From Blepharisma stoltei ATCC 30299 (lineage: Eukaryota; Protista; Ciliophora): a DNA stretch of 64,000 bases. This document shows, piece after piece, positions 1 to 60,286 of the stretch. The notes below the pieces were generated by a model. The model saw only the letters and a program-made list of their open reading frames with translations. It was not told the DNA's origin and did not search any database. Numbering within the stretch: position 1 is the stretch's first letter; each line of letters begins with the position of its first letter. The translations under genes and the position numbers were made by a program. Where the stretch lies: assembly GCA_965603825.1 (NCBI GenBank), contig CBFDEM010000056.1:558001-622000 (forward strand), in the 5' to 3' direction.

Positions 1-1119
1 TTTATACGTAATTCCTAAGTAGCTCAATGAGTTAACGATAAACTCTGCGAAATCTGTGACGAAATTGAATCAGAGCACCTTAATTTCCGCGCAGATCACA
101 TAGATGATTTAAATCACACGAGGAATGCTCTAGAAGAATCTAAATCCAGAATAAGCGACAATCTTCAAGAGCAGATTAGCAAATGAACTTTCCATCAAGA
201 ATATTGCTCAATCTGCTATAATGACACAGACTTGGAATGAAGCCATCCAGAATGCGGCAGCCATTCCTTTTGCAAAAACTGTATTTTTGAATATCTCAAG
301 GTAAAAATCAATGAATCAAAAGTGGAAAATATTACTTGTCCGGGAGATGGGTGCAAAAAAGTTTTCACAGAAGAAATGATAGGCATAATCGTCGGAGAAG
401 AACTTTTTCAGAAGTATAAAAAATTTAAATGGAGACTAGAACTCTTAAAAGACCCAAGCGTAAAATGGTGCCAAACTCCGAACTGCGAAGGATTTATGAG
501 AGGCAGTAATGATAATCCTCATTTGGTCTGTCCTGTCTGTGGGCTAAACGTATGCTTTAAATGTGGAAATATCTGGCACGGCAAAAAAAATTGTGAAAAA
601 ATTATTGATGAAGCCTATGAAATCTGGGCTAAAGGAAAAGAAATTCAACTCTGTCCTAAGTGTAGAAGGAAAATTGAGAAAGTTGATGGGTGCAATCATA
701 TGACCTGCGCTGTATGTGGGTATCAGTGATGCTGGCTATGCAGAGGAGCATATAAGCGAAATCATTTTAGCAGGCTAAACCCATTTGGGTGTCCGAATTT
801 GCAAGCAGGAACTAATACAAGGCAAAATTGACCTCTATGAAAAATTTATAGACGAAGGGCAGGGATGTGCATGTTTTGGATTGGACTAATTTTGCTCTTT
901 CCTTTAATTGGCCTCCTTTATCCAGCCTGGTGGGTTTCTTGCAATTGCTATAGGAATTGGGAATATCGCATATCCTGCTGTTGCAATTTTTCACTGTGTA
1001 TCATAATATTTATCCTGTCATTGATTTTGACACCTCCAGCCTACGTGCTAATCATTCCTGTACTTATATGCTATGGATTTGTCACAGTTCTAAAAGAAAT
1101 AAAGAGAAAGTGCTGTTAG
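1..1119 (+). CDS. RBR (RING-IBR-RING) E3 ubiquitin ligase with C-terminal transmembrane segments (RNF144/RNF217-like); 5'-partial
   Basis: One frame after removing the 15-nt intron 8..22 and reading TGA (28, 184, 238, 727, 829, 838) as Trp. RING1 CSIC...CGSHSFCKNC...CPGDGC, IBR WCQTPNC...CPVC...CFKC...WH, RING2 CPKC...GCNHMTC...YQWCWLC, then two hydrophobic helices. Ends TAG at 1117-1119. Confidence 0.9.
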
Positions 1120-1154
1120 ACTCACTAGCTTACTAATTAAATATAATATTTACA

Positions 1155-2141
1155 TTATTCTGGGCTTTGCTCACTTTCGCTGATTTCAATGTCAACAGAA
1201 TTGGCTTTCAAAAGAATCACTTGTTCATACTTTAATCCTGTTTTTCAATCAAACCTACTGTGCCTGTATCGGCAAAGTAGGCATCTTTTTGATCCTTTAG
1301 ACCTGTTAATTCTTTCTTTTGTGGTTTCTCCTGTAATGCATAGAGAAAAATGGAAAATACATAGAATCCCTATTAAAATTGTAAGAATAAGTAGCAAAAT
1401 TGTTAGGATCACAACAATAATCAGTATAATTTCTTCTTGATTTATAACTATATACAAATTACATGTCCTTTCCTCATAGCTTCCAGGCTTATAAAACAAA
1501 AAAGCTAAAAATCCTGCAAGATCTACTAGACCTAAAAGCACCAAATGCGTAACGAAAATAACGAAATAAATATAATTTCTTGCACCAATGCAATTGTTTA
1601 GATAAGGACAATGGTGGTCAAATAGCTCCACGCAGTTATCACACTTAGCACAATGATGAGATCTAGGTGGCCGAAAAATTTCACAGGTCTGGCAAAACTT
1701 ATATAAAGGTCCATTTTCCATAAATATCACATCAGCTGTAAAAACCTTGGGAACCCCACCCAATGCTTCATAAATTTTTTTTCTTGGAATTATGCCTGGC
1801 TCTGTAAGCAAAGTAAGAAAGTAAAAGAAAATTGTGAAGGCATAACAGTATATCGATAGAATTGGGATTACTATAGTGACATTTTCTCATAGATAGCTCG
1901 AAATAAATAAAAAAAAGCTTGAGGGAACTGCTATTAGACCAATTAATGTACCAAAAAAATGAATATTATCACACGAAGGCCCTATCATAAATTTCCCCTT
2001 AAATAAAAAACGATTGTTTCCAGGCCAAAGCTCTCATAATTGCTTGCTGTATAGGTCCGGAGGAAGATAGGGGAACTCAAATGTATTATTAACACTTTGC
2101 ACTTGAATATCCAAGTCTTCATGATTCTTGTCTGAATTCAT
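1155..2141 (-). CDS. DHHC palmitoyltransferase (ERF2/ZDHHC9-like)
   Basis: WPGNNRF N-terminal motif, Cys-rich domain with DHHCPYLNNCIG, TTKE motif. TGA=Trp at 2034-2036, 1887-1889 and 1245-1247. Probable stop-free 15-nt intron 1448..1462. TAA at 1155-1157. Confidence 0.92.
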
Positions 2142-57042: not shown

Positions 57043-57550
57043 TTTATTAGATTATTTCATGCCGATTCTAATAATAGACTAACTAAAAAGTGGTTTAAAG
57101 CAAGCCAACATGCATCAAAATGTGTATAAAAACGCATAAAATTTATACTAAAATAAGTTGCGTCCAATATATGTGTTTGATCCAATCAACTTTTTATATA
57201 ATTAATATAAATTGCCAGTCAAAAGCATTTATGCTATATATATTTGATTAGTGATTTTTATAAGATTAGATATCATTAATCAATCATAATATATACTATT
57301 AATTTGGATTTCGTTATAAATTTCAATTATATATTAAAATCGTAAATCCTCTGCGCAAAATCAGTAAATCAAGTGAAGAATGGCTTAAAAATTTGTATTT
57401 TTAAAATAACTCTTTAAATGGTAATAGTTAATTTTTCCTGAAACTTAAAGACTTCGCACATTTTAACAAATCTCAAGCTGAAATTTAAATTCCATATAAA
57501 TTTCGGCCAAAGCGAATAAATAAAGTCTTAGAATTTTATTAATCTGGATT

Positions 57551-60286
57551 ATGGGAGGTTGCTTCAGTAATAGACCCAAAATTAAAGACATCTCCTCAAC
57601 TTGTAAGCAAAGCTCAGCTCGAATTTCTAATAGTAATCTTGCCTCTGCCACTATGTCCAACCGATTCACAACTGAAGAGGTTAAAGATAACTCTCGCCCA
57701 GGCTCCGCCAATAGAAAAGCCCATAAAAAAGGAGCCCATGTGAAGAATATACAAAGAAAAGCCAGTATTATAACAGAAGCGACCACTGCAGCAATAAATA
57801 CTCGAGATAAAACTCTGGAAGAAATGATAGAAATTAGGGAAGCTTTAAACCAACATTTCATTTTTAATAGTTTACCCGATGAAGTTATAGACGTAATCGT
57901 ATCGATGATGAAGTTATTTGTTTTAGAGCCAAATCAATTAGTTTATGCACAGGACCAAATGGGTTCTCACTTCTTTGTAGTCACAAAAGGAAAGCTAGAA
58001 ATAAAGGTAAAAAATGAACCGAAAGGCGTTATAACTAAAGGGATGAGTTTTGGGGAGTTGGCATTGATGCACGACTCGAAACGCACTAATTCAGTCTATA
58101 CAATAGAAAGGACCTTGCTGTGGGGAATTGATAGATATGAATTTAGAAATGCAGTAGCTTCTTATAACTCACAGAAATTTGAAGAAAATAGAAAGTTCAT
58201 TGATTCAGTGCCTTTATTGCAAATTTTAACAAATGCTCAAAAAGAAGCATTATTAGCAGTACTGAAAAGCCAAAGCTATTTCCCAGGGCAAAAGATTGTG
58301 ACGGAAGGAGAACCTGGAGATTTATTTTATATAATAAAAGAAGGTACAGTAAGCTGCTATGTCCAAGGAAAAATTGTGAGGCAATTAGGCAAAGGCGATT
58401 TTTTTGGTGAGCAAGCTTTGCTTTATAATTCATTAAGAACTGCAACTATTGTTTCAAATACAAAGGTTGGGGTTCTTTCTTTGTGTAGAGAAGATTTAAT
58501 CAGTGTGCTTGGAGACCAGCTCCAACTTATTATTTATAAGAACTCTCAAAGAATCGCTATAGAATCTAGTCCGCACTTGAAAGACCTGACAAAAAACCAA
58601 GAAGAGGCTGTGATACAAAAAATGAAGGTTGTCAGCTACCAAAACGGAGAAATTATAATTAATAAAGGTATGCCTAAAGGGCATAAACTATGACTTGTGG
58701 TAAAAGGGGCAGTAATTGCTGAAGAATCCGGCAAAAGAATTCTGTCCCTGCATTGTATAGGTGATGAGGAATTAATTAACCCAATTCAAAGTAATTATGA
58801 GGAAAATTATATCGCTGAAGGCTCTGTTGATATAGAAGAAATATCAAGGGCTGAGTTTGAAACTTGTATAGGAGGGAAATTAAACAATATAAAATCTCAT
58901 AATGAAGTGCTAAAAATTATGAGGAATGTACAGCTTTTTAGGGCTTTGCCAACAAACAAGCTTGAATCTCTAGTAAATATGATTTATGTGCAAACATATG
59001 GAGATAAGCAAGTTATTTTCCACGAGTTCTCGCTTGGTGATGCATTTTACATCGTCAAATCAGGCCAAGTCGATATTATTAAAGATAACACTGTATTAAG
59101 AACTGTTGCTAAGCATGGCTATTTTGGAGAAAGATCTATAATTAACAACGAAAAAAGAACAGCCACAGTCGCTGCAAGTGGAAAAGCGAAAGTCTGGGTC
59201 CTTAACAGAGAAGATTTTTTAAATTTAATTGACGAAGGAATAAGACACCAGCTCCTCAAAAGAATGGAGCTTCAAGATGATTCCATCACCTTACCCGACT
59301 TGTCTATAATAAAAATCCTGGGAAAAGGGATGTTTGGAAATGTCTTCATGGCAATTAACAAAAATAAAGGCACGTTGTACGCCTTAAAAACTGTGAATAG
59401 AGCAAAAATAAGAAGCTATGATTTATATACAAATTTGTTACTAGAAAGGCATATTTTGTTGCAAATTGACCATCCTTTTATCATGAAGCTTGTAAAAACG
59501 TTTAAAGATGAGGAGCGTGTATATTTTTTGACAGAGCTTGTGAGAGGAAAAGACCTATTTGATGTGCTCAGGGAAATGAACTTACTTACTGATTCTGATA
59601 CAAAGTTCTTTTCATCGTGCATTTTAATGATTCTTGAGCATATCCATGAAAGAGGAATCATATATAGAGACCTCAAGCCTGAAAATATTATGATTGATGA
59701 AGATGGCTATCCCAAACTTATCGATTTTGGAACTGCCAAAGTCGTAGAAGGCAGGACTTATACGGTGGTCGGAACCCCACATTATATGGCCCCAGAAGTA
59801 ATTTTAGGCAAAGGCTATGGACTTTCCGCTGATTATTGATGCTTGGGAGTTATGATATATGAGTTTGTAGTTGGCTCCATGCCTTTTGGTGATGAAGAAG
59901 AAGAGCCATACGCAGTCTATGAGCAAGTGCTTAAAGCTAAGTTAATCTACCCTCATCATACAAGAATTAATGCAAAATGCAAAGAAGTTCTTGAAAAGCT
60001 ACTTGAGAAAAATCCAGTAATGAGGGGGACGATTGAAACTATTAAAGCAATGAAGTGGTTTGAAGATATAGATTGGGATGCCATGCTTGGCAAACAGATT
60101 AAACCTCCGTATATCCCTCGTTTACCTAATCAGTCAGCTGAACTTAATCAAGCCATGAAATCAAAAGTGTCATTAACAGCAGTCATTTCCGTAATTTTTA
60201 TGTAGAAAGAAGAAGCTCAGGATAGTTTTGAAATTCCAAGAGGCAGAGGAAAACCTCCTCCAACTGCGTGGGATGAAGTTTTTTAA
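57551..60286 (+). CDS. PKG: cGMP-dependent protein kinase (alveolate type, multiple cNMP-binding domains)
   Basis: MGGC acylation start; FGELAL...RT, FGEQAL...RTA, FGERSI...RTA; GKGMFGNV, YRDLKPEN, GTPHYMAPE. TGA at 58691 and 59837. Intron 60191..60205. TAA at 60284-60286. Confidence 0.95.

What the first reader, a model, noticed from the sequence alone, without database searches (positions are those of the whole stretch)
8..60205. Branch-point ruler: the 3' splice site seems set 5 nt after a fixed A rather than by the AG
Seen: all 21 canonical 15-nt introns I identified from GT-AG ends plus reading frame or motif fit have A at position 10 (8, 1448, 7005, 7090, 17278, 19092, 19435, 21741, 21900, 34589, 36146, 37154, 38459, 45179, 51383, 51563, 54462, 54596, 55732, 55960, 60191). 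The two GT-GG candidates have T or C at position 10 and A at position 11. Internal controls: introns 36146, 37154 and 21900 are also followed by G (AG|G), have A10, and need the 15-nt cut to keep frame. Established: heterotrichs have 15-16 nt introns with a conserved internal A. Inference: distance from the branch A overrides the AG dinucleotide, so one base at position 10 could switch the acceptor and the reading frame.
Basis: partly seen in the sequence, partly recalled or inferred. Interest (0 to 1): 0.88.

Follow-up and report, generated by a model that had tools for sequence, protein, structure and literature searches.

The report
Tiny ciliate introns: branch-A spacing rule

Summary
The window is macronuclear DNA of a heterotrich ciliate (41.46 Mb, 64 contigs, TGA=Trp; matches Blepharisma stoltei ATCC 30299).

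All 21 listed 15-nt GT-AG introns exist and have A10. Seventeen fit public gene models and three are removed in RNA contigs.

Of the two GT-AGG candidates:
- **LSm5 (55820-55835, minus):** real. The public 89-aa model needs 15+16+15 nt of introns.
- **19207-19222:** not supported. Four RNA contigs keep it, and public models show two separate genes.

A10, the 5-nt tail and GT-AGG introns are all published (Nuadthaisong 2022; Singh 2023 SI Table S9).

For the rule:
- All 12 published GT-GG introns, and LSm5, have A at -6 (p about 5e-8).
- About 1,090 intron-like A10+TAGG sites exist against only 7 published GG cases with A10.

Against a strict switch:
- 7 of the 12 published GT-GG introns also have A10.
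- One T10/A11/AGG intron (L007) needs the 15-nt cut.
- The RNA-confirmed 17-nt intron has no A at -6.
- Published 16-nt introns have A at 10 or 11.

Verdict: known biology, with a spacing preference rather than an override. First-stage notes flagged similar GT-GG sites elsewhere in this genome; I did not test them.

The parts
8..22 (+). 15-nt GT-AG intron candidate, A10 and A11, followed by C
   Evidence: Sequence only; at the window edge, no gene model checked
1448..1462 (-). 15-nt GT-AG intron candidate, A10
   Evidence: Sequence and weak frame support
7005..7019 (-). 15-nt GT-AG intron candidate, A10
   Evidence: Sequence; frame support poor
7090..7104 (-). 15-nt GT-AG intron candidate, A10
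   Evidence: 370 open codons upstream; no model checked
17278..17292 (-). 15-nt intron, A10
   Evidence: Left out in RNA contig of run X1; model 17191-18735 (509 aa) needs 15 nt
18868..18884 (+). 17-nt GT-AG intron; A at 10, 11, 13; T at -6
   Evidence: 17 nt left out in runs X2 and X3; model 18799-19259 (142 aa) needs 32 = 17+15
19092..19106 (+). 15-nt intron, A10 and A11, followed by A
   Evidence: Left out in all 4 runs
19207..19222 (+). GT-AGG 16-mer (C10, A11): rejected as an intron
   Evidence: Kept in all four spanning RNA contigs; upstream gene stops at 19257-19259; next gene P0001 starts at 19297
19435..19449 (+). 15-nt intron, A10
   Evidence: Left out in all 4 runs; removed in public protein P0001
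21741..21755 (-). 15-nt intron, A10
   Evidence: Model 21722-22759 (335 aa) needs 30 nt; no RNA contig covers it
21900..21914 (-). 15-nt intron followed by G (control), A10, T11
   Evidence: Same model, 30 = 15+15; frame needs 15
34589..34603 (+). 15-nt intron directly after the ATG, A10
   Evidence: Model 34586-34894 (97 aa, Robl_LC7) needs 15
36146..36160 (+). 15-nt intron followed by G (control), A10, C11
   Evidence: Kinase/EF-hand model 35918-37342 (464 aa) needs 30
37154..37168 (+). 15-nt intron followed by G (control), A10, T11
   Evidence: Second intron of the 464-aa model; frame support
38459..38473 (+). 15-nt intron, A10 and A11, followed by A
   Evidence: PAP2 model 37441-38658 (400 aa) needs 15
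45179..45193 (-). 15-nt intron, A10
   Evidence: 670-aa kinase model spans 2028 nt, so 15 nt are non-coding; frame support
51383..51397 (+). 15-nt intron starting GTC, A10
   Evidence: Model 51317-53395 (682 aa) needs 30
51563..51577 (+). 15-nt intron ending CAG, A10
   Evidence: Second intron of the 682-aa model
54462..54476 (+). 15-nt intron ending AAG, A10 and A11
   Evidence: Model 53414-55636 (730 aa) needs 30
54596..54610 (+). 15-nt intron, A10 and A11, followed by A
   Evidence: Second intron of the 730-aa model; strong frame support
55696..56011 (-). LSm5 gene, 4 exons, 89 aa
   Evidence: Public model: 89 aa, PF01423, in a 316-nt span identical to the window; exon 2 matches LSm5 chains and LSM profile positions 14-41
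55732..55746 (-). 15-nt intron of LSm5, A10
   Evidence: Part of the 46 nt the model needs
55820..55835 (-). 16-nt GT-AGG intron of LSm5: T10, A11, A12
   Evidence: Only 15+16+15 gives the 89-aa frame; a 15-nt cut stops at 53 aa; public model needs 46 nt. No RNA reads laid here
55960..55974 (-). 15-nt intron of LSm5, A10
   Evidence: Frame support; part of the 46 nt
60191..60205 (+). 15-nt intron, A10
   Evidence: Model 57551-60286 (906 aa) needs 15

Best explanation
These are the ordinary tiny spliceosomal introns of a heterotrich ciliate, plus one member of the published minor class of 16-nt GT-AGG introns. The best fit is two minimum distances rather than one ruler. The branch adenosine lies at least 10 nt from the 5' end (positions 10-12). 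Exon ligation takes a G that is normally 5 nt, sometimes 6-7 nt and rarely 4 nt, after that A. AG is preferred, but the last G is enough. With A10, the AG at 14-15 is at the right distance and is used. With only A11 in a ...AGG context, the AG is one base too close, so the next G is usually used, which gives a GT-GG intron and a +1 frame. When both A10 and A11 are present the two cuts compete: AG usually wins, and the gene's frame together with mRNA surveillance fixes which product counts. Shown: the sequence regularities, the RNA removal of several introns, and the gene-model arithmetic. Inferred: that the A is the branch point, and that geometry is the cause.
For: A10 in 21/21 listed introns against 27% background. 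Introns removed in RNA contigs and in public models. Published: A10 in 15-nt and A11 in 16-nt Stentor introns with a 5-nt tail; Blepharisma 16-nt introns with A at 10 or 11, 17-nt with A at 10-12, and none shorter than 15. All 12 GT-GG introns of Table S9 have A at -6 (p about 5e-8), and so does LSm5. Several Table S9 sequences were seen in this genome. Motif counts: about 888 (A10, non-A11) and 201 (A10+A11) intron-like TAGG sites above background, against 7 published GG introns with A10. The GG spliced fraction is higher without A10 (0.68 against 0.51, one-sided p=0.037). Slu7 and Prp18 were not detected in Stentor, which fits 3' site choice by proximity.
Against: No branch point has been mapped in any heterotrich. 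L007 (T10, A11, TAGG) needs the 15-nt cut, so it uses either a 4-nt tail or a non-A branch. The motif counts mix real introns with chance sites, and the background subtraction is rough. Table S9 is not exhaustive (LSm5 is missing from it), so the share of GG use is a lower bound. One Table S9 row (Contig_42.g2) could not be found in the genome from the machine-read text.
Confidence: 0.7

Rival explanations
1. Strict ruler: the 3' cut is always exactly 5 nt after the branch A whatever the dinucleotide, so the base at position 10 alone switches acceptor and frame.
For: A at -6 in 13/13 GT-GG introns. The three AG|G controls with A10 and non-A11 use AG. LSm5 with T10/A11 uses GG.
Against: 7 of 12 published GT-GG introns have A10. 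L007 with T10/A11 uses AG. The 17-nt intron at 18868 is spliced in RNA with T at -6. Published 16-nt introns with A10 have a 6-nt tail. Candidate 19207 (C10/A11/AGG) is not spliced.
Confidence: 0.1
2. Acceptor wobble without branch control: at any ...AGG end the spliceosome cuts after AG or after AGG at random, surveillance removes the out-of-frame product, and the gene's frame alone decides which form is annotated.
For: Singh 2023 reports minor alternative splicing, possible NMD of the shorter form, and spliced fractions of only 0.28-0.87.
Against: A11 in 12/12 GT-GG introns against about 25% expected. GG introns are very rare compared with about 1,090 intron-like A10+TAGG sites.
Confidence: 0.1
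3. The GG 'introns' are artefacts: one-base assembly errors, pseudogenes or mis-joined gene models.
For: Candidate 19207 did turn out to be a false join of two genes.
Against: LSm5 is an essential, conserved 89-aa protein whose second half is in frame only after a 16-nt cut. The MAC window and the separate MAC+IES record are identical across the gene. The published cases rest on spliced reads.
Confidence: 0.03

Closest known systems
Heterotrich 15/16-nt spliceosomal introns (Stentor coeruleus: Slabodnick 2017; Nuadthaisong 2022, PMC9505925; Blepharisma undulans: PMC13685798)
   Same: GT-AG ends, 15 nt, A at position 10 (position 11 in many 16-nt introns), 5-nt 3' tail, AT-rich, often near the 5' end of genes.
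   Different: Nothing for the 21 listed introns; they are ordinary members.
Blepharisma stoltei GT-GG (GT-AGG) non-canonical introns (Singh et al. 2023, PMC9942806, SI text and Table S9)
   Same: The LSm5 intron is 16 nt, starts GT, ends AGG, and is needed for the full reading frame.
   Different: It is not among the rows of Table S9. The authors explain the class by descent from 15-nt introns and by NMD. In the SI text I read, they do not state that an A always sits at -6.
Fixed branch-to-acceptor spacing in intron-poor eukaryotes (Irimia and Roy 2008, PMC2483917; only title and abstract seen)
   Same: The 3' intron end is constrained, with the branch signal at a set short distance from the acceptor.
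   Different: Those introns keep a canonical AG and a long conserved motif. Here the whole intron is 15-17 nt and a GG end can be used.
Yeast second-step factors Slu7/Prp18, needed only when the branch-to-3' site distance is long (Brys and Schwer 1996; recalled from memory, not checked here)
   Same: A very short branch-to-acceptor distance lets the 3' site be chosen by proximity. Slu7 and Prp18 were reported as not detected in Stentor.
   Different: Their presence in this genome could not be tested here.
NAGNAG tandem acceptors of animals and plants
   Same: Two adjacent possible acceptor cuts give alternative products.
   Different: NAGNAG sites are 3 nt apart, both AG, and keep the frame. 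Here the shift is 1 nt, the second end is GG, and the frame changes.

Membership tests
Heterotrich tiny GT-AG introns | Length 15 nt (minor classes 16-17) with GT...AG ends | tested here: met
   21/21 at the given coordinates; the 17-nt case at 18868 as well
Heterotrich tiny GT-AG introns | Adenosine at position 10 | tested here: met
   21/21 against 27% in other GT-N11-AG sites of the window
Heterotrich tiny GT-AG introns | Absent from mature RNA | tested here: met
   17278, 19092, 19435 and 18868 are left out in RNA contigs.
Heterotrich tiny GT-AG introns | The A is the lariat branch point | not testable with these tools
   No lariat data available; the literature assumes it
Blepharisma GT-AGG 16-nt introns: LSm5 55820-55835 | 16 nt, 5' GT, 3' AGG | tested here: met
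Blepharisma GT-AGG 16-nt introns: LSm5 55820-55835 | The 16-nt cut is required for the full-length product | tested here: met
   89 aa with 16 nt and 53 aa with 15 nt; public model is 89 aa in 316 nt; LSM domain in exon 2
Blepharisma GT-AGG 16-nt introns: LSm5 55820-55835 | Spliced reads across the GT-GG junction | not tested
   The single read-laying run was used on 17100-22000
Blepharisma GT-AGG 16-nt introns: candidate 19207-19222 | Spliced out of RNA and required for the product | tested here: not met
   Retained in 4 of 4 contigs; public models are two genes of 142 aa and 181 aa
NAGNAG tandem acceptors | Two AG acceptors 3 nt apart | tested here: not met
   The shift is 1 nt and the distal end is GG
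U12-type (minor) introns | AT-AC or GT-AG ends with U12 branch and donor motifs, and a minor spliceosome | not tested
   Singh 2023 found no minor snRNAs in this species

The most novel reading that the evidence does not exclude
In heterotrichs, which may lack Slu7 and Prp18, exon ligation is fixed by geometry at the fifth base after whichever adenosine branches, and only the final G is read. Competition between A10 and A11 would then set a tunable ratio of in-frame to out-of-frame (degraded) mRNA. That would be a one-base frame switch, possibly used for regulation, for example feedback on the splicing factor LSm5.
Probability: 0.15. Interest if true: 0.65.

Novelty: new member of a known kind. 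Interest (0 to 1): 0.33.

Why it matters
If the spacing preference is causal, heterotrich introns are a natural minimal system in which 3' splice-site choice depends on distance from the branch point more than on the AG. That would make the geometry of the second splicing step testable with one-base mutants. As it stands, the main facts are published. The new items are small:
- the LSm5 intron is a further GT-AGG case;
- an A sits at -6 in all known GT-GG introns;
- there are clear exceptions that rule out a strict ruler.

Tried and rejected
- **Intron caller.** A frame-only caller was far too noisy because TGA is sense. Adding codon scores gave few but clean calls. It missed introns that lie just after a start codon.
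- **Genome letters.** The planned table of 15-nt against 16-nt cuts at all GT-N11-AGG sites could therefore not be built from sequence context. I used whole-genome motif counts instead. I did not try to recover flanks by other means.
- **Spurious sites.** L001, L041 and L046 looked like introns by frame, but they are probably antisense or chance.
- **LSm5 exon 3.** Searched alone (24 aa), it matched nothing in PDB sequences or Pfam.
- **Table S9 row Contig_42.g2.** Two patterns built from the machine-read text found no site.
- **Look-up with a wrong start.** A look-up for 38677-39207 found no record; the public start is at 39189.
- **Pfam on the 142-aa gene.** It found no domain, so there is no support for a TTC14-like fusion.
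- **Joined sequences.** The joined LSm5 model was only measured for open-frame length inside a script.
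Full report
**What the window is.** The window is G000 contig C56, 558001-622000, in a genome of 41,464,486 bases in 64 contigs. TGA has to be read as Trp for conserved genes to stay open. Identical DNA is found in NCBI record GCA_914767885.1. Size, contig number and genetic code match the published Blepharisma stoltei ATCC 30299 macronuclear genome. 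A complete rDNA unit lies at 9481-14615.

**The observation.**
- All 21 listed 15-mers are present with GT...AG ends and A at position 10.
- In the 315 other GT-N11-AG sites of the window, A10 occurs in 27%. Of the 13 unlisted GTA...TAG 15-mers, only 2 have A10.
- Four public runs that behave as RNA were laid on 17100-22000. Their contigs lack 15 nt at 17278 (one run), 17 nt at 18868 (two runs), and 15 nt at 19092 and 19435 (four runs each).
- Public gene models were fetched around three window genes and P0001 and mapped back to the window. The NCBI record is the MAC+IES version and carries extra inserts. This covers 17 of the 21, including the three AG|G controls (21900, 36146, 37154).

**The two GT-AGG candidates** (coordinates).
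- *LSm5, 55820-55835 (minus strand, T10, A11).* Only 15+16+15 nt of introns give an 89-aa open frame; a 15-nt cut stops at 53 aa. Exon 2 matches LSm5 chains and the LSM profile. The public model is 89 aa with PF01423 in a 316-nt span, so 46 nt are non-coding. I accept it, although I saw no junction reads.
- *19207-19222 (C10, A11).* All four RNA contigs that span it keep the 16 nt, while the same contigs lack the neighbouring introns. The public models are a 142-aa gene that ends at the TAA at 19257-19259 and a separate 181-aa TPR gene starting at 19297. Contigs can hide a minor isoform, but the claim that the frame requires this intron fails.

**What is already known.**
- Stentor: A10 in 98% of 15-nt introns, A11 in most 16-nt introns, and an explicit 5-nt tail.
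- B. undulans shows the same motif.
- Singh et al. 2023 (SI) describe GT-GG introns, mostly GT-AGG and 16 nt or longer, backed by spliced reads. They note that 16-nt introns have the A at 10 or 11 and 17-nt introns at 10-12. Table S9 lists the cases with their spliced fractions.

**Testing the rule.**
- From Table S9 I read 12 GT-GG introns of 16 nt. All 12 have A at position 11 (-6). With A11 at about 25% in intron-like sites, p is about 5e-8.
- Seven of the 12 also have A10, so position 10 is not a binary switch.
- GG splicing is more efficient without A10 (mean fraction 0.68 against 0.51; one-sided p=0.037, n=5 and 7).
- Several table entries were seen in this genome. One was confirmed by my frame test (L037), which supports the method.
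- Whole-genome counts of GTA-N6-x10-x11-N-TAG-y16, where A = A, B = not A, G = G and H = not G:

| x10, x11, y16 | Count |
|---|---|
| A, A, G | 336 |
| A, B, G | 1186 |
| A, A, H | 1463 |
| A, B, H | 4256 |
| B, A, G | 292 |
| B, A, H | 1536 |
| B, B, G | 659 |
| B, B, H | 3377 |

- Taking the sites without A10 as background leaves about 888 (A10, non-A11) and about 201 (A10+A11) intron-like sites followed by G. Only 7 published GG introns fall in the A10+A11 class, so with A10 present the AG cut is the norm.
- Among 41 sites without A10 but with A11 and TAGG that I could inspect, one needs the 16-nt cut (L037). One needs the 15-nt cut: L007, with 80 codons from an ATG, one in-frame TAA inside the 15-mer, then 462 open codons.
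- The 17-nt intron at 18868 has T at -6.

**Reading.** The data fit a preference, not an override. The branch A lies at least 10 nt from the 5' end. Ligation occurs at a G usually 5 nt after that A. AG is preferred, but the final G suffices. Competition arises when A10 and A11 are both present. That the A is the branch point, and that geometry is the cause, are inferences. Slu7 and Prp18 were reported as undetected in Stentor, which fits choice by proximity, but I could not test this genome.

**Limits.**
- The single reads call was used on one region.
- Table S9 was read from machine-extracted text, and one row could not be located in the genome.

Noticed in passing
window 10985-15266 against L052:1-5100: The NCBI MAC+IES record carries about eight short extra inserts (roughly 65-230 bp each) inside the rRNA genes that the window lacks. 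The germline rDNA copy therefore seems to be interrupted by eliminated sequences.
   Followed up: partly
window about 60152-60188 (L051:5125-5805): A 645-bp insert in the MAC+IES record sits within about 40 nt of the 15-nt intron at 60191, inside the 906-aa cNMP-binding kinase gene. Many other inserts of 100-650 bp interrupt genes across L051-L053.
   Followed up: partly
window 51383-51397 (+): This intron starts GTC rather than the near-invariant GTA, yet the public 682-aa model needs it.
   Followed up: partly
L007 (G000 C2:506223-506238, minus strand): A 15-nt intron with T10 and A11, followed by G, whose frame needs the AG cut. It uses either a 4-nt tail or a non-A branch.
   Followed up: partly
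window 18799-19857 (+): Two genes of 142 aa and 181 aa lie 37 nt apart and appear on one RNA contig in all four runs. The 142-aa product has no Pfam domain.
   Followed up: partly
window 34589, 36146, 37154, 54462: Four introns begin right after an ATG codon (ATG|GTA). At 34589 it is the start codon. In L029 another ATG|GTA intron with A9-A11 and AGG appears to use the 15-nt cut.
   Followed up: no
window 9481-14615 (+): A single complete 18S-5.8S-28S unit lies between ordinary protein genes.
   Followed up: no
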